NCBI RefSeq assembly: GCF_016432865.1
Contig: NC_067403.1
Span: forward strand, 252,774,001-252,838,000
Source: Antechinus flavipes
Lineage: Eukaryota
DNA length: 64,000 nucleotides
Direction of reading: 5' to 3'
The notes under the pieces are model-generated. The model did no database searches, had not been told where the DNA came from, and was given only the letters and a program-made list of their open reading frames with translations. Position 1 is the stretch's first letter, and every line of letters starts with the position of its first letter. Position numbers and translations under genes: made by a program. Below are positions 47,786-59,879 of this stretch, in pieces.

Positions 47786-50700
47786 ATGCTGCAGACCAGC
47801 AACTACAGCCTGGTGCTGTCCCTGCAGCTGGTGCTGCTGCTCTACGACCTGCTGGTGAACGCCTTCTCGGAGCTGCTGCGCGCCACCCCCGTGATGCAGC
47901 TGGTGCTCTTCATGTGAGTCCCGCCCTGCGCCCGGCCGACTTAGTGGGAGGGGGTGGAGCGTGCCTTCGTAACCCCCCCTCCCCCTCCTCCCGCTGTGGT
48001 ACCGCTGGTGCTGCTGGGAGTCCCGTCCTGGGCCGCGGAGGGGGCCCTTACTGAGGCTGGTGCCGCCGGGAGTCCCGTCCTGGGCCGCGGGAGGGGGCCC
48101 TTACTGTCCCGTCCTGGGCTGCGGAGGGGGCCCTTACTGAGGCTGGTGCCGCCGGGAGTCCCGTCCTGGGCCGCAGAGGGGGCCCCTTACTGAAGCTGGT
48201 GCCGCCGGGAGTCCCGTCCTGGGCCGCGGGAGGGGGCCCTTACTGAGGCTGGTGCCACTGTCAGTCCCGTGCTGAGCCGCAGAGGGGCCCTTTACTGAGG
48301 CTGGTGCCGCCGGGAGTCCTGTCCTGGGCCCCGGAGGGAGCCCCCTTACTGAGGCTGGTGCCGCCGGGAGTCCCGTCCTGGGCCCCGGAGGGAGCCCCCT
48401 TACTGAGGCTGGTGCCGCCGGGAGTCCCGTCCTGGGCCGCGGAGGGAGCCCCTTACTGTCCCGTCCTGGGCCACAGAGGGGACCCCTTACTGAGGCTGGT
48501 GCCGCCGGGAGTCCCGTCCTGGGCCGCGGAGGGAGCCCCTTACTGAGGCTGGTGCCGCCGGGAGTCCCGTCCTGGGCCGCGGGAGGGGGCCCTTACTGAG
48601 GCTGGTGCCACCGGGAGTCCCGTCCTGGGCCGCGGGAGGGGGCCCTTACTGAGGCTGGTGCCACTGTCAGTCCCGTCCTGGGCCGCGGAGGGGGCCCTTA
48701 CTGAGGCTGGTGCCACCGGGAGTCCCGTCCTGGGCCGCGGGAGGGGCCCCTTACTGAGGCTGGTGCCACTGTCAGTCCCGTCCTGGGCTGCGGAGGGGGC
48801 CCTTACTGAGGCTGGTGCCGCAGGGAGTCCCGTCCTGGGCCGCGGAGGGGGCCCTTACTGAGGCTGGTGCCACTGTCAGTCCCGTCCTGGGCCGCGGAGG
48901 GGGCCCCTTACTGAGGCTGGTGCCGCCCCCCGTCCTGGGCCGCGGAGGGGGCCCCTTACTGAGGCTGGTGCCGCCGGGAGTCCTGTCCTGGGCCGCGGAG
49001 GGGGCCCTTACTGAGGCTGGTGCCGCCGGGAGTCCCGTCCTGGGCCGTGGGAGCAGCCCTGACTCCGGGAGGGCCCTGCTAGGCTGGAGTTGGCGGGCAG
49101 CCTCCCATCGGCCGCTCTCCTGACAGATCCTTGCTCATCTTTTGCTTGTGCCTCTGCAGCATCCAAGACATCTGTATCCTCTTCAACATCATCATCATCT
49201 TCCTCATGTTCTTCAACACCTTCGTGTTCCAGGCTGGGTTGATTAGCCTCCTCTTCCGAAAGTTCAAAGGGACCATCATCCTAACGGCCATCTACCTGGC
49301 GCTCAGCATTCCCCTCCACGTCTGGGTCCTGGTAAGCAGGGGGGCGGGTGGGAGACGGGCTCGGGCAGCCAGGCCGGGGCCCTGCCCGCGTTCTCCCCTG
49401 CAGGAGGGAGGCAGGAGCCCGCCCAGGGGCTGCCTCCGCCCCATCATCTCGGTGTGGTGCTCCCTCGGCCCGGCCCCCTCCGCTGCCTCTGCTGTCATCA
49501 TTTTCCCCCTAGTTCTGCTTTCTTCACTTTGCATCAGTTTACGTTTTCTTGCCTGTTCTGAAGCCATTATTTCACAGACCACGGTAATGATTTTCATTTA
49601 CCTGCATGAGCCGTAGTTTGGAGCCGTTCCTCCACGGAGAGATGTTTCCCGTTTCCAGTTCTTGGCTATTACAGGGAGCACTTGTAAATATTTATATGAG
49701 ATCTTTCTATTGGTCCTTGGTCTCCCTGGAGATGGGAGTTTCTTCCAGCAGCAAAATTTCTGGCTTAAAAGGTAGAATAGTCACTCCTTAGTATAATTCC
49801 TCGTTTCCGATGGCTGGACCGATGCCCAATTTCACCCCAGAGTGTTGCTGAGTGGGTCTCTCTGTTGCCCTTAATGGCTTTTTTGGTCACCTCGGCTGAT
49901 TTACCAGGCGTGAGGTGAAATGGTGGATGCTCTTCGTGTCTTCCTATTTGTGACTTGGAGCAGGCTTTCCTGCAGGGTCAGGAGGACACCCCGTGCCTCA
50001 GGCCTCACGCAGCGCCGGGTGCTGGGTGCCGGGCAGGGGGCCCGCACAAGCCAAAGCGAGTCCCTCCCTGCTTGCGCCCCCTCCTGTATGGTTAGAAAAT
50101 CTAGCCTAGAAAACGCCATTCGTTTTCCGGATCATCCTTCACAGGCGTCGTCCGCAGGCAAGTCGCCAGACCAAGTTTCCCCGCCGCCAGCCCTTTGGCT
50201 GACACTCTCCAACCAGCGGATGCCCGCGGTTTCCTGCAGGTCCAAAGGTGTAGCCTCCTTTTCCCAGGGTGACCTGGAAGGAGAGGGGCCATTTTCTGAC
50301 TTTGTCCTCCCACGTTAAGGAAGTGGTGGCAGTAAAAATGGAAGCATCCTCGGTGACTTTTGAGGTCATTGTAACTAAGGTGTGACGTGGGTGAGACGCT
50401 GTGCTAGGGACGGAGAATGCGAGGTAAAAAACCGCGTGTCCCCCCCTCTTCCTGTGAGGAGGTTATGTTGTCCTGGGGAGACACAGCATGTCAACAGGAG
50501 GAAATCCCAAGTAGGTTCTCGAGGGAAATGACGCGAATGGCCAGCGATGTCAGGAAAGACCTCGGAGAGGAGGGAACAATTCCCACGGTGCATTGTGCAG
50601 GAAGGGAGAAGGTAGAGTCAGGAGGGAACAGATGTAAGGACATCTTGTGCAAACGCAGGAGAGGTGGAGGGCCACGAGTCAGAGAACAGCGAGGGGGATG

Positions 50701-53700
50701 AGAAATAAGGCAGGAAAATGAAGGTGGAACCCTGTGGTACGGTACCCACAGAATCCCAGAGCCAGGCTTTTGTATTTATCCTAAGGTAGTGGCTACCTTT
50801 GATCGGATCAGCATTTCAGGAATAGCGGTTTGGCAGCTATTTGGAGGATTGATTATGGGGCAGAAAAGAAGTAAGGAGACCCCCTGGGTCTCTTCCAAAA
50901 GGCCAAGTAAGAGATGTGGGGCCTCGCGTTAGGTTAGAAGCTGTGTCCGTGGAGAGCCGGGCACTGGGGAGCTCGAGGAGAAGGAGAAGGGGCAAAGCCC
51001 CCTCCACTTCAGGGAGTATCCTGCGCTTGGAAACTCAGGAAGCTGCATGAAGTTTGGAGGAGGATGCAGTGACTTGGCAGCCATTTGGAATAGAGGCAAT
51101 GGAATAATAGCTTTAATTCTGAACACGTCAGCACAGTACCTTGCATACAGTAAGCACTTAATAAATGCTTCTCCACTCCTTCCAGCTGGGTTTGAGATGT
51201 GTATAGGACATCCAGGGCAATTAATAACACGAGACGGGAATCCTGGATGAATTTAAAGATTCGCAGTCATTTGTTTGGAGATGATAATGGAGTGTGGAGG
51301 AGAAAAGCAAGCTGGGAACTCAGGCTTTATGAGGAGAGTGTGGATAATGATTTAATCAGAGAGTTAGAAAAAAGGGCCCAAGAAGAGAAAGAAGTATTAC
51401 AGAAACTAAAAGGAATTGCGAAAATTTCCACGAAAGCTCATGTTTCATACTCACGAAAGAGAAGCCGTAAGGGTAAAATTAGTTTAAAGAAAGCATAGTG
51501 AGAGATTAAGAGAAGTTCTCTGGGGCAGCTCAGCAAGACCTGAGTTCAAATCCGACCTCAGACACTTAGGAGCTTGTGACCCTGGCTAAGTCATTTGCCT
51601 TTCTCCCATTCCCCCTCAAAAGAAGAAAAAAAATTCCTTGAGCAATCAAGAGGGAAAATAAAAGGACAACAAGCAGGAGATATTTGCCGCTGTCATAGAA
51701 GAAACTGAACGCAGAATCCCCAGTGAAGAGGGATTTCTTAGAGAGAAGTCCTCCCGATAACACCGTACTGGTCACATGGAGCCCCAGAACATGGCAGGGC
51801 CTCCTAGAAGAAATCCATAATCATTCAGAAGATTTTGCTGCAATCATCCATACGGGGAAAAATAAGTGGACGAAAACTACCTGTTGTGGCAGACGGTCAT
51901 ATGGACAATCTATTACTGTGTACATAAACATGTGGATATATATATAGAGAGAGAGACAGACAGACAGACATGTATGTGTGTCCATGTGTATGTATGTATG
52001 TGATGGTGCAGAAAATAGCAAAGCTTTCTTAAGAACATCACTTATCTCCCAGAAACAAGGGCTCATCCCATTTTTAAAAAGAGTTTCATATTTAATGATA
52101 ATCTTTTGTTTTTACATCATCTCTATTTCCAGTGAAATCACCAGCCGTTGCTCTCTCCCTTTCAACAGAAATTTAGAAAGGGGAAAAGAACAGCCCGGCC
52201 ACTCACATAGCCTCGGCCCGCTGCATGGACAGTGCCCACAAGGCATGAGTCGTGAGGGGAGCTCACCCTGGGAGTCCTCATGGCACGTTCATTTGGGCGT
52301 GCCTCAGAGGGCAGAGGAGGCGGCAGGGAGGGGGCAGCCCGTGAGACGGTGGGACGAGAGGTGGAGACCGGGCCCCCTCCGAGGCCTGCTGGCTGGCTGC
52401 GTGCCCCAAGATGAGAACTTGCCAGCAGGAGCCCGCCCTCCACTGGGAGCAGAGACTTCCCCCGTCTCAGAGAAGCGAGGGGACCTGGATCCTGAGAGGA
52501 CTGGAACTCGGTGCCCTTTACTCCAGGTCCAGCTCTCCTTGCTCTGTTCAAAGCTGCTGCTGCAGCGGGCAAACCCTGGGTGTGCCGAAGCCCCTGCCCA
52601 TGGGGTCGGCCTCCTGAGAACAGATGTGGGGGGAACGTGACATCTGGGAGGTGCCCGCTGACTGGCACACTGACCTTTCTGGGAGTCTCGACCCTGACAG
52701 CCAATGTAAAGTCCGCCCCCTTCCCCAGGATTCCCTTCCTCTGAATTATTGAGGAGGAGGAAAAGACCTGGGGCAGGGCTGGGATTCCCGGTCCCTCCCC
52801 GCCTTGGGCCCTCTGGGATCGATTCCATCACCGTGGATCCTCCCAGCCCCCTTTCTCAGCAGCAGAGGAGCAGGGCTCACAAGCGGGAGGCCGGCTAGGG
52901 CCGATGAGATGGCACTAAGCTGGCAGAGCTGCCACCGGCCGGGGACATAAGAGGATTTTCTGGGATCTTCAGGCTGAAGCCAAAATAGGTTCTGCTTTTC
53001 CTTGCCAAAGCTGCTGAGCCGAGCGGTTTCATTCTGAGTACACTCGAGCCCTTGGCCTCTAGGAGCAGAGGTTAGGGGGGAGCCGGCCGGCCCCGCGGTC
53101 CAGGAAAGGGGGCTCGGCTCCGGGCCTCTCCTCCCAGTGAGTGAGAAGCGCTGAAGTGTTTGACAAAGCATTGCATGGGGAAGGACTGAGTTTTCCTGGG
53201 AAAGTGTCCCCGGGAGCAATCTGTGGGCTCGGGGAGGTGGGGGCTCTGAACGGCCGGGCCCTGCAGTGGGAGGCCTCAGCTTGGTGAGCCCCGGGCGCAG
53301 GGGGCCATCAGCGTGGCCAGCACGGAGCAGTCCAAGAGAGGATGGGGGCTTGTGGATAGGGCAGAGAAGAGCTGGGCCCGATTGGCCCATTCAGGCCGGG
53401 GCTGCAGATGGAGCCAGGCCCGGGGGCAGGACGCCTCTGATGGCCGCCTTTCCCTCCTTTAGAACCTGCGCTGGAAAAGCTCCAAGCCGTTTATCTGGAC
53501 GGATGGCCTTCAGACCCTGTTTGTGTTCCAAAGGCTGGGTAAGGACCACATTCACCTCGGGCCTCTCCCTTTCCCCAAGGAGTATCCCACCCAGCAGGAG
53601 TGTTCTGGCCAGTGGCTCGGCCCCCTCCCTCCCCCCGCGCAGTGCCGTTCCTCAGCCTCGGGGTGCCGGGGGGCCAGTGTCATCTCCCCAAAGGGGCGGC

Positions 53701-55718: not shown

Positions 55719-57949
55719 ATGGCACCGCGAGGTGAGCTGCCCGAGGTGTGTGAGTCTCCGCGTTCGGGGACCCCCGCCCAGCCCTCGGTTTCCCTATAGG
55801 TCCAAGGGGAGGAGCGCGCTGGCCACGCTCGTAAACGCGGGCGGGCCGGGCGGGCAGAGGTCGGATGGCGAGGGAGGTAGGGGAAGCACGCGGCCTCGCG
55901 GCCCATCGCCCTCGGGTCTCCCCCTCCAGGCCGCCGGCTGTCGTCCATCTCCCTGGAGGTCCTGATCTTTCTCAATGGTTGGTACAGCGCCACCTACTTC
56001 CTGTTGGAGCTTTTTGTGTTTATGTACAAAGGTGAGCTCGAGCGACCCTCTCCCCGAGGTGAAGCCCCTTCCCTCCTCCTGGCCCCGCCCTCTTACTCTT
56101 AACTTTGCCGCTCCACGCCTCTGGCCCCGCCCCAGCATAGCTCCACCTTTCCATTAGCTTTACTTGTCCTGTCCCTCTCGGCCCCCGCCCCTTCTTAGCC
56201 TCGCCAGTCCCCGCCTCCTGGTCCCACTCTTTCCTAGCTTTGCCCATAGACACCCCTCCTGGCCCCACGCCTCCTGCTCCTAACATTGCCCCTCCATGTC
56301 TTCTAGCTTAGGCAAGTCCACGCCTCTCAGCCCCACCCCCAGCATAGCCCCGCCCCCTGTTAGCTTTGCCCCTCCCCGTCTCCTAGCTTTGCCTGTCCAT
56401 ACCTCAGCCCCACCCCCAGCATAGCCCCGCCCCTCTGTTAGCTTTGCCCCTCCACGTCTCCTACCTTTGCCTGTCCATACCTCAGCCCCACCCCCAGCAT
56501 AGCCCCGCCCCTCTGTTAGCTTTGCCCCTCCACGTCTCCTAGCTTTGCCTGTCCATACCTCAGCCCCACCCCCAGCATAGCCCCGCCCCTCTGTTAGCTT
56601 TGCCCCTCCTCTCCTAGCTTTGCCTGTCCACGCCTCTCAGCCCCATCCCCAGCATTGCCCCACCCCTGCTGTTAACTTTGTGGTCCACGCCCCCTCCTGG
56701 CTCCACCCCTTATGTTCTTAACTTTGCCCCTCCACGGCTCCTAACTTAGGCAAGTCCACGCCTCTCAGCCCCACCCCCGGCATAGCCCCACCCCTCTGTT
56801 AGCTTTGCCCCTCCCCATCTCCTAGCTTTGCCTGTCTATACCTCAGCCCCACCCCCGGCATAGCCCCACCCCTCTGTTAGCTTTGCCCCTCCCTGTCTCC
56901 TAGCTTTGCCTGTCTATACCTCAGCCCCACCCCCAGCATTGCCCCGCCCCTGCTGTTAGCTTTGCCCCCCCACGCCCCCTCCTCTCCTTGCTTCGCTTGG
57001 ACACGCCTCCTGGATCCACCCCCAGATTGGCCCCGCCCCCAGGGCCCTGCCCGTAAACAGATGGAGGTGCTTTCCCAGGTGGGCCCCGTGCCACCTTGGG
57101 TGAGTCTCTCCCCCTGCCCTGCACACGCTGGTCATTTTCTGCCTCTTCTCCGGCTGGCGCCAGGGCTCCTGTTGCCGTACCCCACAGCCAACCTGGTCCT
57201 CGATGTGGTCATGCTCTTCCTTTACCTGGGCATCGAAATCATCAGGCTCTTTTTTGGTGAGTGGCCTGCACTGCTCCTGCCCCACCGGACACTGTCCCGG
57301 GCCTGAAGCTGCGCCATGGCCCCCGGGGAGCTTGGGGAGGAGCCACCATGGAGGACTCGCCCAATGAGGAGCCTCCTCTCCTCTCCCCCCACCCCAGCCC
57401 CCCAGCAATGGGCTCCTTTCCAAAACCCTTCACAGGCACTTGGGGGTAGCTGTGATTGTCCCAAGTGCTCCTTTTGGGGAGGAGGGAGGAGCCAAGCCTC
57501 CTGACTCGGGACCCCAAGTCTGGATGACACTGGAATCGGCAGCTGGGTGGTCGGGCATCCCCTGGTGGCCTGGTAGCTCCTGGAGGGGACGCCATAGGGC
57601 CTTTCTTGGACATGTCTTGACAGCTACAAAAGGGAACCTCTGTCAAAGGATGATGCCCCTTGGGATCAGCTTGGCCATGACCTTTCCATCCGCCATGATG
57701 GCTTTCTATTACTTCTTGGTGCAGACCTATGTCCTGCGCCTCGAAGCCGTGATGAGTGCCATCCTGCTCATTTTCTGCGGCTTGGAGCTGGTGCTGGAGG
57801 TGTTCACCCTCGCCACCTTCAACAGGTACTTCTGCCTCCCTCTGGGAGGGTCTGGGGAGGGGGAGGGGGGCGGGCAAATGGGGAGGCCAGCTGCTACCTT
57901 CTGGTCTCTAACCTGCTCCCTTCCTGCCCCTAGCATGGACGCATATTGA
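55719..57949 (+). CDS. TMEM216: Transmembrane protein 216 (ciliary transition zone, MKS2/JBTS2 ortholog), 141 aa
   Basis: Exons 55719-55731, 55930-56031, 57164-57256, 57624-57825, 57934-57949 sum to 426 nt: MAPRGRRLSS...LPYPTANLVLDVVM...QTYVLRLEA...NSMDAY*. Confidence 0.96.
56060..56960. repeat. C-rich hierarchical minisatellite (78-bp higher-order unit), TMEM216 intron 2
   Basis: ctcagcccca at 56403, 56481, 56559 gives a 78-bp period. Shorter tagctttgcc-containing subunits have degenerate flanks. Confidence 0.92.
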
Positions 57950-58376
57950 AGGACGAGGCCTGTTGAGGCCGGCGACAGGCCCCCTGGCGCCCCAGAGGCG
58001 CGGGCTCTCAGGGAGGCTGGCGGCGTCTCCTCCCGGATGGCGAAGGGCACACGGCCCTCTCCCAGGCCCTCGAACCCCGTCCTTGCTCGGCACTCCCAGA
58101 GCGCTGGGTCCGAGTCGTCTGCGTCTCCTAGGCTCCTGGCTTGCGTTAGGCCCCACGTGCCCTTTGTGTGTGTCTATATGTGTGTGTCTATATATGTGTG
58201 TGATCCGTCCCCCCAGAAGCCCCAGGGCCTGCCTTTCACAAGGATGTTTTCTTCCACTAACTCCAAACCAAGCTCTCATTCCATTCATTCCCTTCCGAAG
58301 GGACCAGGCAGCAACACTCAGCAGCTCGGAGCGGTCTTTTCTTACGCTGTGTCTTGGGACAAACACACTATTTTAC

Positions 58377-58382
58377 AATAAA
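58377..58382 (+). terminator. TMEM216 polyadenylation signal AATAAA
   Basis: Canonical hexamer about 430 nt past the stop, followed by T/G-rich sequence. Confidence 0.75.
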
Positions 58383-59879
58383 TATTTATTTTCTGTTGTG
58401 GGGGCTGCTGCCCTTTCCTTATGGCCCTTTCTCTGCACGAAGCCCGGGGGCCCTGGCAGCGGGGCACCCCGAGAATTTCGGCCTCTCTTCCTCACCAGGA
58501 CTTGCTCTGGCTGGTCCCTGAGAACCCGGGGCTTTCCAAAAAGTTTCATTTCATTGGATTCTGGGGCAAGGCTGGAGGCAGACAGACGGGGACGAGAGAC
58601 AGGACAGCTGGGGGGAGGGGAGGGATCTTCTGACCAGCACTTGGAGCTACTGCTCCATCCCCCAGTTGTTCTCTCGCTGCAGGCTACCAGGTCTACCTCC
58701 TCTTCCTCTTCCTTTCTTTAGATTCCCGAGGTCTTCCCAGGCTGGGAGACTTGCACCAAGTCCCGTCCCTTCGGTAAACCGGCCTCTCACAGGAAAACCC
58801 CAAATCCACACATCTCCCCTAGAGGGGCTGGACCTTCAGGGGGTTACTGCCTTGCTTTTCTCCACTGTGGCTTTAGCACTTGGGACCTTAGCACTCCCAT
58901 TTGGGAAAAAGGAACCCACGGGCCTTCTCACAATTGGACGTGAAACCTCATTTCATTTGCACGTTGCCACTACGGGCACTTAAAAAGGCAAAGGCTGTCA
59001 GGCAAACCCCCAGTTCGTTAGGATACCCCTGGATCCTGACCTGACCCAACACCCTCGCAGCCTGACTTGGAATTGACTGATTGATGGAGGCCAACGGGAC
59101 CTAGGAGTTCACCTAGTTCAAGCCCTATTTTATAGAAGCAAACAGACCCAGAGAGGGGCAGGGATTTGCCCGCCAGCATGCTGATCCTTGGGACTTGCCC
59201 CCGCTTCCCCATTCTGCCACCCCCGCCGGCTGGGTGAGTGCTTAACCGTAAAGTTCTCTGTTTCAGTTTCCTTGGGGTCTCTGGGAGCAGCCTTCCTTTC
59301 AGTTGTCATCACAAATGCAGCCAGGGGTTAAAGTTTAAATCCTTTATTATCTCCTTCAAAGTCTTGTCTCCTTCACTTGGGGCTCGGCCTGTTTTTCTGG
59401 AAGCCCATCTCTCTCCTTGGTTCCGAGTGCTTGAGCTCTGCCCTCTGAATCTCCCCGACTCCAAAGGTTTGTGCTTCTGCCTCCGGCCACAGCAAGGGCG
59501 GCCGTTGGACTGAATCTGTCTCGGCCTCTGAGAGCTTCTAGTGCACTTGTCCTGGCCCTGGGAGCTTCTTGCTTATATGCCCCACGCGAGTACAGACCAA
59601 TCATCATATCGCTAGGAAACCATTATTTGTTGTAGGGTTAAATCAATACTAAACTAGATTTAACCATTGTCTCAATTCCACTTAGTGTCTTGTTTCAAGT
59701 TGTGGCCCATAACACTCCACTCTGCTTACAAGCCCCAAACCCGGCTCCTCCCTTTGCTACCCAAGTAACCAGAAGCACTTCCTCCTCCTGCCCAGGAAAT
59801 GGCGGTGCTGCCTTTGTAAGGCCGGGTCCTGTTACCCCAGCTTCTCTCAGAACTGTTAGATGGGATGCTTAGACCACCT

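What the first reader, a model, noticed from the sequence alone, without database searches (positions are those of the whole stretch)
57615..57640. TMEM216 encodes Ala at human Gly77 through the same exon-first G>C change recalled as a Meckel allele
Seen: exon 3 ends TTT TTT G|gt and exon 4 starts ag|CT ACA AAA GGG AAC, so the split codon is G|CT (Ala) in IRLFF-A-TKGNLCQR. Recalled knowledge: human reads IRLFF-G77-TKGNLCQR, and c.230G>C (p.Gly77Ala, first base of that exon) is a reported pathogenic TMEM216 allele thought to act partly by mis-splicing. The neighbouring disease residues R73 and R85 are conserved here. Inference: this is a compensated pathogenic deviation, so Ala may be tolerated and the human disease may be a splicing defect. 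A second AG 9 nt downstream (57631-57632) would give an in-frame FF-G-NLC isoform lacking three residues.
Basis: partly seen in the sequence, partly recalled or inferred. Interest (0 to 1): 0.75.

Follow-up and report, generated by a model that had tools for sequence, protein, structure and literature searches.

The report
Marsupial TMEM216 carries human disease allele
In Australian marsupials the normal ciliary gene TMEM216 starts exon 4 with the same G-to-C change (Gly77Ala) that causes Meckel syndrome in people by disturbing splicing, yet the exon is still spliced at the usual site, so this is a real but familiar kind of tolerated disease variant.

Summary
The window is Antechinus flavipes. 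Its TMEM216 has five coding exons at 55719-57949 (+). Exon 3 ends TTT TTT G|gt (57256) and exon 4 starts ag|CT ACA (57624), so the split codon is GCT, Ala, where other vertebrates have Gly77.

It is not an assembly error.
- The spliced protein equals RefSeq XP_051820173.1.
- Two DNA runs read C at 57624.
- An RNA contig joins 57256 to 57624.
- Nine Australian marsupial species of three orders have Ala. Dromiciops, opossums, monotremes, eutherians, sauropsids, amphibians and fishes have Gly.

Gly77Ala is a Meckel variant. TMEM216 chr11:61165246 G>C is curated among 106 exon-first-nucleotide variants shown by experiment to disturb splicing.

Both the splicing effect and the Ala must be tolerated there, so the two cannot be told apart.

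I found no change shared by the clade at the 3' end of intron 3. Its pyrimidine runs are short (3-8) in every species. The only other clade-wide derived change in exons 3-4 is Leu95Met (57677 T>A), a candidate compensator.

I found no evidence for the +9 AG isoform. This is a new member of a known kind, the compensated pathogenic deviation, of moderate interest.

The parts
55719..55731 (+). TMEM216 coding exon 1 (ATG GCA CCG CGA G), followed by donor gt
   Evidence: Sequence. The spliced product equals XP_051820173.1.
55930..56031 (+). TMEM216 exon 2
   Evidence: Weak Pfam PF09799 match (E 0.063). The loose end of the RNA contig of X17 before 57162 carries the end of exon 2, which gives the exon 2-exon 3 joint.
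57164..57256 (+). TMEM216 exon 3. It ends TTT TTT G, and its last base is the first base of codon 77. Arg73 codon is at 57244-57246.
   Evidence: PF09799 match with E 1.2e-05. Same length, with ag before and gt after, in five other marsupials.
57257..57623 (+). Intron 3 (367 nt, GT..AG). In its last 25 nt the longest pyrimidine run is 8 and there are 15 pyrimidines in all. Position -3 is C.
   Evidence: The RNA contig of run X17 skips exactly 367 nt with GT..AG ends.
57624..57625 (+). Exon-first C and the T after it. With G at 57256 they form codon GCT = Ala at the human Gly77 position. 57624 is the counterpart of human c.230G>C.
   Evidence: C in the DNA contigs of X1 and X3. C in Sarcophilus, Petaurus, Macrotis and the Trichosurus retrocopy. 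G in Dromiciops, Monodelphis, Fukomys and Sorex.
57624..57825 (+). TMEM216 exon 4 (202 nt). It encodes TKGNLCQR...TLATFN. Arg85 codon is at 57647-57649.
   Evidence: PF09799 match with E 2e-14. dN/dS of 0.12-0.24 among marsupials.
57631..57632 (+). Second AG, 9 nt inside exon 4. It is formed by the Lys79-Gly80 codons AAA GGG, and no use as an acceptor was seen.
   Evidence: K72 and G73 (141-aa numbering) are invariant in 58 vertebrate sequences. No FFGNLC-type isoform among the stored proteins. No such joint.
57677..57679 (+). ATG = Met at the human Leu95 position. The T>A change at 57677 is the only other derived change in exons 3-4 shared by all the Ala77 marsupial sequences compared at DNA level.
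57826..57933 (+). Intron 4 (108 nt, in frame and free of stops)
   Evidence: ORF 57440-57949.
57934..57949 (+). TMEM216 exon 5 coding part (C ATG GAC GCA TAT TGA). A poly(A) signal AATAAA lies at 58377-58382.
47786..53543 (+). TMEM138 coding exons (47786-47914, 49146-49331, 53463-53543) directly upstream, head to tail with TMEM216
   Evidence: tblastn with the TMEM138 part of P0159.

Best explanation
This is the functional TMEM216 gene of Antechinus flavipes. A G>C change at the first base of exon 4 (Gly77Ala) arose once, in the common ancestor of the Australian marsupial orders after Dromiciops split off. It has been fixed ever since.

Shown here:
- the exon is still joined to exon 3 at the canonical acceptor (57256|57624);
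- the gene stays under purifying selection;
- the other disease residues are kept.

The same change in people is a Meckel syndrome allele that is curated as disturbing splicing. The marsupial state is therefore a tolerated, possibly compensated, pathogenic deviation.

Inferred, not shown: in marsupials exon 4 is recognised without a G at the exon-first position, although the pyrimidine tract is short. Ala is an acceptable small residue at the cytosolic end of transmembrane helix 2. The single co-fixed change, Leu95Met (T>A, 53 nt further into the exon), may help either at the protein level or at the RNA level.
For: Identity of the locus.
- 4231/4231 nt identical to A. flavipes CM028222.1.
- Spliced protein equals XP_051820173.1.
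- PF09799 match and TMEM138 directly upstream.

Distribution of the change.
- Ala77 and Met95 occur in Antechinus, Sarcophilus, Sminthopsis, Macrotis, Vombatus, Phascolarctos, Petaurus, Trichosurus and Notamacropus.
- Gly77 and Leu95 occur in Dromiciops, Monodelphis, Gracilinanus and every other vertebrate cluster retrieved. By motif the counts are 129 G/L, 1 G/V and 20 A/M. By alignment, 132 of 137 have Gly.
- At DNA level the exon-first base is C in four Australian species and one retrocopy, and G in Dromiciops, Monodelphis, Fukomys and Sorex.

Splicing.
- The RNA contig of run X17 joins 57256|57624 with GT..AG ends.
- RefSeq 141-aa models in eight species read FF-A-TKGN.
- The intronless Trichosurus retrocopy carries ...ATT GCT ACA..., a fossil of that spliced mRNA.

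Constraint.
- Exon 4 dN/dS is 0.12-0.24, including pairs inside the Ala clade.

Human allele.
- PMC12779253 and FexSplice Table S1a.
Against: - RNA support in this species is one 88-nt contig with only 30 nt on the exon 4 side. It comes from a coded organism whose exon 2 differs from the window by one base, so it may be another individual or a close relative.
- Contigs give no junction counts, so splicing efficiency and minor isoforms are unknown.
- No compensating change has been demonstrated. The 3' end of intron 3 shows no change shared by the clade.
- The AF2 model puts residue 77 at the very end of helix 2 and residue 95 two turns into helix 3. This does not suggest direct contact.
- I could not read Valente 2010 itself. 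What the human allele does to the mRNA is known to me only through the FexSplice curation and the HGMD 'CS' class.
Confidence: 0.85

Rival explanations
1. Assembly or sequencing error, or a private polymorphism, at 57624. The animal would really have G (Gly77).
For: None found. Run X1 may be the assembly's own source and so is not independent.
Against: Run X3, from another coded organism, differs at 12 positions and 3 indels over 57000-58159 and still reads C at 57624. Independent assemblies of Sarcophilus, Petaurus and Macrotis have C. Nine species have Ala in their protein models.
Confidence: 0.01
2. Ala77 would be harmful in the ancestral protein too, and is rescued in Australian marsupials by the co-fixed Leu95Met. 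This would be an intragenic protein-level suppressor, the classic form of compensated pathogenic deviation.
For: Leu95Met co-occurs with Gly77Ala without exception: 20 A/M, 129 G/L, and no A/L or G/M. It is the only other derived, clade-wide change in the 295 nt of exons 3-4. Gly77 and Leu95 are otherwise nearly invariant from sharks to mammals. The two residues sit on neighbouring helices 2 and 3.
Against: Both changes map to one stem branch, so this is a single evolutionary coincidence and not statistical covariation. In the AF2 model (mean pLDDT 72, and 58-69 around the loop) residue 77 is the second-to-last residue of helix 2, while residue 95 is the ninth residue of helix 3. They are about two turns apart in depth. 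No coordinates were available to measure a distance. The human allele is curated as a splicing variant, so a harmful effect of Ala itself has not been shown.
Confidence: 0.2
3. Ala77 is functionally near-neutral in any TMEM216. The human allele is pathogenic only through mis-splicing, and the marsupial intron 3/exon 4 context tolerates a non-G exon-first base.
For: The FexSplice curation places the human variant among those shown by experiment to affect splicing, and HGMD classes it as splicing. Gly to Ala is the smallest possible side-chain change. The marsupial junction is used normally (and the retrocopy). The pyrimidine content of the last 25 nt is somewhat higher in marsupials (14-19) than in the two eutherians examined (12 and 15).
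Against: All marsupial acceptors have pyrimidine runs of only 4-8 nt. This is inside the range (10 or fewer) that Fu et al. 2011 (PMC3105431) found predisposed to aberrant splicing after an exon-first mutation. Petaurus (C) and Monodelphis (G) share the same last 8 intron bases. No intronic change is shared by the clade. Gly77 is invariant in every non-Australian vertebrate TMEM216 retrieved, which argues that Ala is not freely neutral.
Confidence: 0.45
4. The dominant acceptor in this species is the AG at 57631-57632, giving FF-G-NLC, so Ala77 would rarely be made.
For: That AG is followed by G, the preferred exon-first base. It lies only 9 nt downstream of an acceptor weakened by C, and the product would be in frame.
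Against: The only RNA joint seen is 57256|57624. All RefSeq models and the Trichosurus retrocopy contain A-T-K. No FFGNLC isoform occurs among 163 proteins. The deletion would remove the invariant Lys79. The AG is an unavoidable by-product of the Lys-Gly codons and is also present in Gly77 species.
Confidence: 0.03

Closest known systems
Human TMEM216 c.230G>C, p.Gly77Ala (Meckel syndrome type 2; rs386833830, ClinVar 200, HGMD CS103901; Valente et al. 2010)
   Same: Same gene and same codon. Same G>C change at the second codon base, which is the first base of the exon after a phase-1 intron. Same resulting codon GCT in Antechinus, Sarcophilus and Petaurus.
   Different: In people it is a rare recessive disease allele curated as disturbing splicing. 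Here it is the fixed wild type of a whole clade, the exon is spliced at the canonical site, and the gene is under purifying selection.
Compensated pathogenic deviations (human disease variants that are wild type in other species; e.g. PMC6606640 and the work it cites)
   Same: A human pathogenic state is the normal state in an orthologue that is otherwise well conserved. One co-fixed substitution (Leu95Met) is a candidate suppressor.
   Different: Most described cases are treated as protein-level effects. Here the human allele is a splice-affecting exon-first-nucleotide variant, so tolerance has to hold for the RNA as well as for the protein. No compensator has been shown.
AG-dependent 3' splice sites vulnerable to exon-first-nucleotide variants (Fu et al. 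2011, PMC3105431; FexSplice, PMC10531444)
   Same: The intron 3 acceptor has a short, broken pyrimidine tract, with a longest run of 3-8 in eight therians. That matches the class described as needing G at the exon-first position.
   Different: In Australian marsupials the site works with C at that position and without any lengthening of the pyrimidine run. This is an apparent natural exception to a rule derived from human minigenes.

Membership tests
TMEM216 orthologue (Pfam Transmemb_17, PF09799) | Significant match to the Transmemb_17 profile | tested here: met
   Exon 4 gives E 2e-14 (54.5 bits against a cut-off of 26) and exon 3 gives E 1.2e-05.
TMEM216 orthologue (Pfam Transmemb_17, PF09799) | Best hits are proteins named TMEM216, and the spliced product equals an annotated TMEM216 | tested here: met
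   All named hits are TMEM216. The spliced product is identical to XP_051820173.1.
TMEM216 orthologue (Pfam Transmemb_17, PF09799) | Conserved synteny: TMEM138 directly upstream on the same strand | tested here: met
   TMEM138 exons lie at 47786-53543 on the + strand. Macrotis has the same neighbour.
Compensated pathogenic deviation | The variant is reported as pathogenic in humans | tested here: met
   PMC12779253 names Gly77Ala as a Meckel syndrome variant. FexSplice Table S1a gives HGMD and ClinVar ids. ClinVar itself and Valente 2010 could not be read.
Compensated pathogenic deviation | The same state is wild type and fixed in another species' functional orthologue | tested here: met
   Nine species in three orders carry it. 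Exon 4 dN/dS is 0.12-0.24.
Compensated pathogenic deviation | A compensating change in the carrier lineage neutralises the harmful effect | not testable with these tools
   There is only a candidate: Leu95Met at 57677 T>A. No shared intronic change was found. Cell or minigene assays are needed.
AG-dependent 3' splice site (Fu et al. 2011) | Uninterrupted pyrimidine stretch of 10 nt or fewer in the last 25 nt of the intron | tested here: met
   The longest run is 8 in Antechinus and 3-8 in the seven other therians examined.
AG-dependent 3' splice site (Fu et al. 2011) | Loss of G at the exon-first position causes aberrant splicing | tested here: inconclusive
   The canonical joint is present in RNA and in a retrocopy. 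Contigs give no proportions, so partial mis-splicing cannot be excluded.
AG-dependent 3' splice site (Fu et al. 2011) | Requirement for U2AF35 in spliceosome assembly | not testable with these tools
   This is a biochemical assay.

The most novel reading that the evidence does not exclude
The Australian marsupial TMEM216 acceptor is a natural, roughly 50-million-year-old exception to the rule that a short pyrimidine tract needs G at the exon-first position. The single co-fixed exonic change (T>A at 57677, Leu95Met) would be the suppressor that made the G>C change viable, acting on exon 4 recognition, on helix 2-helix 3 packing, or on both. If so, a one-nucleotide suppressor of a human Meckel allele could be read straight from comparative genomics and tested.
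Probability: 0.15. Interest if true: 0.65.

Novelty: new member of a known kind. Interest (0 to 1): 0.4.

Why it matters
It bears on how the human allele (ClinVar 200) should be read. A whole clade lives with Ala77, which fits with, but does not prove, the amino-acid change being benign and the disease arising from mis-splicing. That would make the allele a candidate for splice-directed correction.

It also gives a clean natural test case for rules that predict when exon-first-nucleotide variants break splicing. The same base change sits in the same exon, with an equally short pyrimidine tract, and has opposite outcomes in two mammalian lineages. Exactly one co-fixed exonic change is available to test.

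As a by-product, the paired changes G77A and L95M separate the Australian orders from Dromiciops.

It is still one site, and the general phenomenon is well known.

Tried and rejected
- Valente et al. 2010 could not be read by PMC id or by DOI. Three literature searches for G77A, Gly77Ala and c.230G gave only one useful paper. The hydrocephalus review and the MKS cohort paper did not contain the allele.
- I first took the window for Sarcophilus because of a 100% hit over exon 4. I rejected this after DNA comparison: 87% identity to the devil locus and 100% to Antechinus flavipes.
- Runs X11 to X14 looked like holders, but X11 laid only low-complexity 31-mers.
- I looked for a compensating change at the acceptor, in the last 80 nt of intron 3, in the pyrimidine runs, at position -3, in intron length and at the exon 4 donor. 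Nothing was shared by the C-bearing species to the exclusion of the G-bearing ones.
- No consensus branch-point motif (yNyTrAy or CTrAy) was found in any species.
- The third protein search returned 539 hits but listed only 120, all vertebrate TMEM216. TMEM17, TMEM80 and invertebrate homologues were therefore not examined for Ala at this column.
- The AF2 model gave secondary structure but no coordinates, so the distance between residues 77 and 95 could not be measured.
- Two look-ups of encoding contigs (Vombatus, Gracilinanus) and one of Loxodonta found nothing.
- No human DNA was fetched or compared.
Full report
**What is in the sequence.**
Reading the window gives a five-exon gene on the + strand.
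- Exon 1 coding part: 55719-55731.
- Exon 2: 55930-56031.
- Exon 3: 57164-57256.
- Exon 4: 57624-57825.
- Exon 5 coding part: 57934-57949, with an AATAAA at 58377-58382.

Exon 3 ends TTT TTT G followed by gtgagt. Intron 3 (367 nt) ends gtcttgacag. Exon 4 begins CT ACA AAA GGG AAC. Arg73 (57244-57246) and Arg85 (57647-57649) are present. The second AG is at 57631-57632. The three larger exons all match Pfam Transmemb_17.

**Which organism.**
A word search with the stop-free ORF 57440-57946, scored on the exon 4 part, returned only TMEM216 proteins. The best hit was a Sarcophilus isoform, so I first took the window for the devil. DNA comparison corrected this. The devil locus (L006) is only about 87% identical, while the Antechinus flavipes locus (L007, GCA_016432865.2, CM028222.1) is identical over all 4231 nt. 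The spliced translation equals RefSeq XP_051820173.1. TMEM138 lies directly upstream on the same strand.

**Is the C real?**
- In one search a DNA contig of run X1 is identical over 57000-58500. It may be the assembly's own source.
- A contig of run X3, a different coded organism, differs at 12 positions and 3 indels over 57000-58159 but not at 57624.
- Independent assemblies of Sarcophilus, Petaurus and Macrotis also have C as the first exon base. Dromiciops and Monodelphis have G, and so do the eutherians Fukomys and Sorex.

An assembly error is excluded.

**How old and how wide.**
The 163 TMEM216 proteins retrieved split cleanly.
- Ala77 with Met95 (human numbering) occurs in Antechinus, Sarcophilus and Sminthopsis (Dasyuromorphia), in Macrotis (Peramelemorphia), and in Vombatus, Phascolarctos, Petaurus, Trichosurus and Notamacropus (Diprotodontia).
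- Gly77 with Leu95 occurs in Dromiciops, Monodelphis, Gracilinanus, platypus, echidna, all eutherians, reptiles, birds, amphibians, coelacanth, lungfish, shark and ray-finned fishes.
- By motif the counts are 20 A/M, 129 G/L and 1 G/V, with no mixed A/L or G/M state.

On the usual marsupial tree, with Dromiciops as sister of the Australian orders (my own knowledge, not tested here), this is one change on the stem of the Australian radiation. By my own estimate of the divergence times, that is some 50 million years or more ago.

Exon 4 dN/dS is 0.12-0.24, including pairs inside the Ala clade. Arg73, Gly80, Asn81, Arg85 and Leu114 are kept. The gene is therefore functional and constrained.

**Which acceptor is used.**
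- The RNA run X17 has an 88-nt contig that joins 57256 to 57624, skipping 367 nt with GT..AG ends. Another of its contigs runs from exon 2 into exon 3.
- The contig has only 30 nt on the exon 4 side. The exon 2 piece differs from the window by one synonymous base, so the RNA may be from another individual or a close relative.
- RefSeq 141-aa models in eight Australian species all read FF-A-TKGN.
- Trichosurus has an intronless copy of CDS positions 27-426 (L004 8262-8661) that reads ...TTC ATT GCT ACA AAA.... It is a retrocopy, and so a fossil of an mRNA spliced at this acceptor with C as the first exon base.
- No protein or isoform lacks Ala/Gly77-Thr78-Lys79, and no joint to 57633 was seen.
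- The AG at 57631-57632 is the unavoidable product of the invariant Lys79-Gly80 codons. It is equally present in Gly77 species, so it needs no special explanation. Minor use cannot be excluded, because contigs drop rare forms.

**The human allele.**
- PMC12779253 names TMEM216 Gly77Ala as a Meckel syndrome variant from Valente et al. 2010 and counts the residue among the most conserved of the TMEM17/TMEM216/TMEM80 family.
- Gly (GGN) to Ala (GCN) can only be G>C at the second codon base, which is c.230. The numbering agrees with c.253C>T = R85X in PMC3579735.
- Supplementary Table S1a of FexSplice (PMC10531444) lists chr11:61165246 G>C in TMEM216 (HGMD CS103901, rs386833830, ClinVar 200, reference Valente 2010) among '106 splicing-affecting Fex-SNVs'.
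- By the paper's methods these are first-nucleotide-of-exon variants for which RT-PCR of patient material or a minigene showed aberrant splicing.

That the allele acts on splicing is already curated knowledge. I could not read Valente 2010 itself, so I do not know the exact aberrant transcript.

**What the comparison can and cannot say.**
The marsupials carry the same nucleotide at the same exon-first position, so they face the same splicing hazard. The locus shows that both effects are tolerated in that lineage. It does not separate them.

Fu et al. 2011 (PMC3105431) found that a run of at least 10-15 pyrimidines is needed for normal splicing when the exon-first G is lost, and that runs of 10 or fewer predispose to exon skipping. 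The longest pyrimidine run in the last 25 nt of intron 3 is as follows.

| Species | Exon-first base | Longest pyrimidine run |
|---|---|---|
| Antechinus | C | 8 |
| Sarcophilus | C | 6 |
| Petaurus | C | 5 |
| Macrotis | C | 7 |
| Dromiciops | G | 8 |
| Monodelphis | G | 4 |
| Fukomys | G | 3 |
| Sorex | G | 4 |

Every species falls in the vulnerable class. This agrees with the human allele's behaviour and makes the marsupial state an apparent exception. Total pyrimidines are slightly higher in marsupials (14-19 of 25) than in the two eutherians (12 and 15). Position -3 is C in seven of the eight and was not printed for Sorex.

**Search for a compensator.**
- An alignment of the last 80 nt of intron 3 shows no reliable column that separates C-bearing from G-bearing species, apart from the exon-first base itself.
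- Petaurus (C) and Monodelphis (G) even share the last eight intron bases.
- The donor of intron 4 and the length of intron 3 do not separate the groups either.
- In the 295 nt of exons 3 and 4, three positions distinguish the groups. These are 57624 (G>C), 57677 (T>A, Leu95Met) and 57780. At 57780 the Australian clade keeps the Gly that eutherians also have, so that one is not derived.

Exactly one derived change, Leu95Met, travels with Gly77Ala. It could act on the protein or on exon recognition, since it lies 53 nt into the exon.

An AlphaFold2 model of the Antechinus protein was built from 58 sequences (mean pLDDT 72, pTM 0.58). It has helices at 5-40, 46-71, 80-101 and 105-139. Ala77 (residue 70) is the second-to-last residue of helix 2. 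Met95 (residue 88) is the ninth residue of helix 3. They lie on neighbouring helices but about two turns apart in depth. Confidence in the loop is low (58-69). Because both changes sit on one branch, their co-occurrence is a single event and not evidence of coevolution.

**Verdict.**
This is a fixed, ancient, clade-wide state and not an error. It is a tolerated pathogenic deviation, a well-known kind of phenomenon. The unusual point is that the human counterpart is a splice-affecting exon-first variant and that the marsupial acceptor looks no stronger. I rate it a new member of a known kind with moderate interest. In the library I could search, no top-ranked paper mentioned TMEM216 together with marsupials.

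The decisive work is at the bench: junction counts from raw RNA-seq, base-swap minigenes, and cDNA rescue with G77A with and without L95M.

Noticed in passing
L006 (Sarcophilus harrisii), about 48 nt upstream of the exon 4 start; window counterpart near 57574-57577: Two devil gene models (P0152, 157 aa, and P0001, 122 aa) use an upstream acceptor ag|GTCACTGG 48 nt before the canonical one. This inserts 16 in-frame residues (G-HWRGRHRTFLGHVLT-A-TKGN). That acceptor has G as the first exon base. In Antechinus the corresponding AG lies 47 nt upstream and would be out of frame. Whether use of this site reflects a canonical acceptor weakened by C is unknown.
   Followed up: partly
L004:8262-8661 (Trichosurus vulpecula, CM021910.1): This is an intronless copy of TMEM216 CDS positions 27-426 with an intact reading frame. 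It is annotated as the last exon of a 165-aa 'TMEM216-like' gene with a new 5' exon at L004:1001-1129. It carries Ala77 and Met95 and also His at Arg73, which is a human Joubert/Meckel substitution. It is probably a retrocopy. Exon 4 dN/dS against the other species is 0.15-0.33.
   Followed up: partly
window 56286-56968 (intron 2 of TMEM216): A GC-rich tandem repeat with a 78-bp unit, in two blocks of about 5 and 2.6 copies (91-95% matches). It is full of CCCCGCCCC and CCCCACCCC boxes.
   Followed up: no
window 57826-57933, and ORF 57440-57949: Intron 4 is 108 nt, in frame and free of stops. The 3' part of intron 3 is also open in the exon 4 frame. Retained-intron transcripts would therefore escape nonsense-mediated decay and encode longer proteins. 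A 172-aa Sarcophilus UniProt model (P0147) reads on from exon 4 into intron 4 (…TFNRYFCL…) and lacks the SMD(A/T)Y end.
   Followed up: no
Proteins P0153-P0157, P0159, P0162 (turtle, lizards, birds, echidna): These are 262-325 aa gene models named TMEM138 that carry both PF14935 (TMEM138) and PF09799 (TMEM216). They are read-through fusions of the two adjacent ciliopathy genes. In Macrotis the called TMEM138 coding range ends less than 500 nt before the start of TMEM216 (L003).
   Followed up: no
L003 (Macrotis lagotis): The bilby TMEM216 is very GC-rich, its intron 3 is only 85 nt, and its exon 4 dS is about 1.0 against every other marsupial, with raised dN (0.17-0.23). This looks like a fast-evolving locus, possibly affected by GC-biased gene conversion. 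Its Ala77 codon is GCC rather than GCT.
   Followed up: no
window 26000-50000: A long stretch of 60-73% G+C lies upstream of TMEM138/TMEM216. This is unusually high for a marsupial genome.
   Followed up: no
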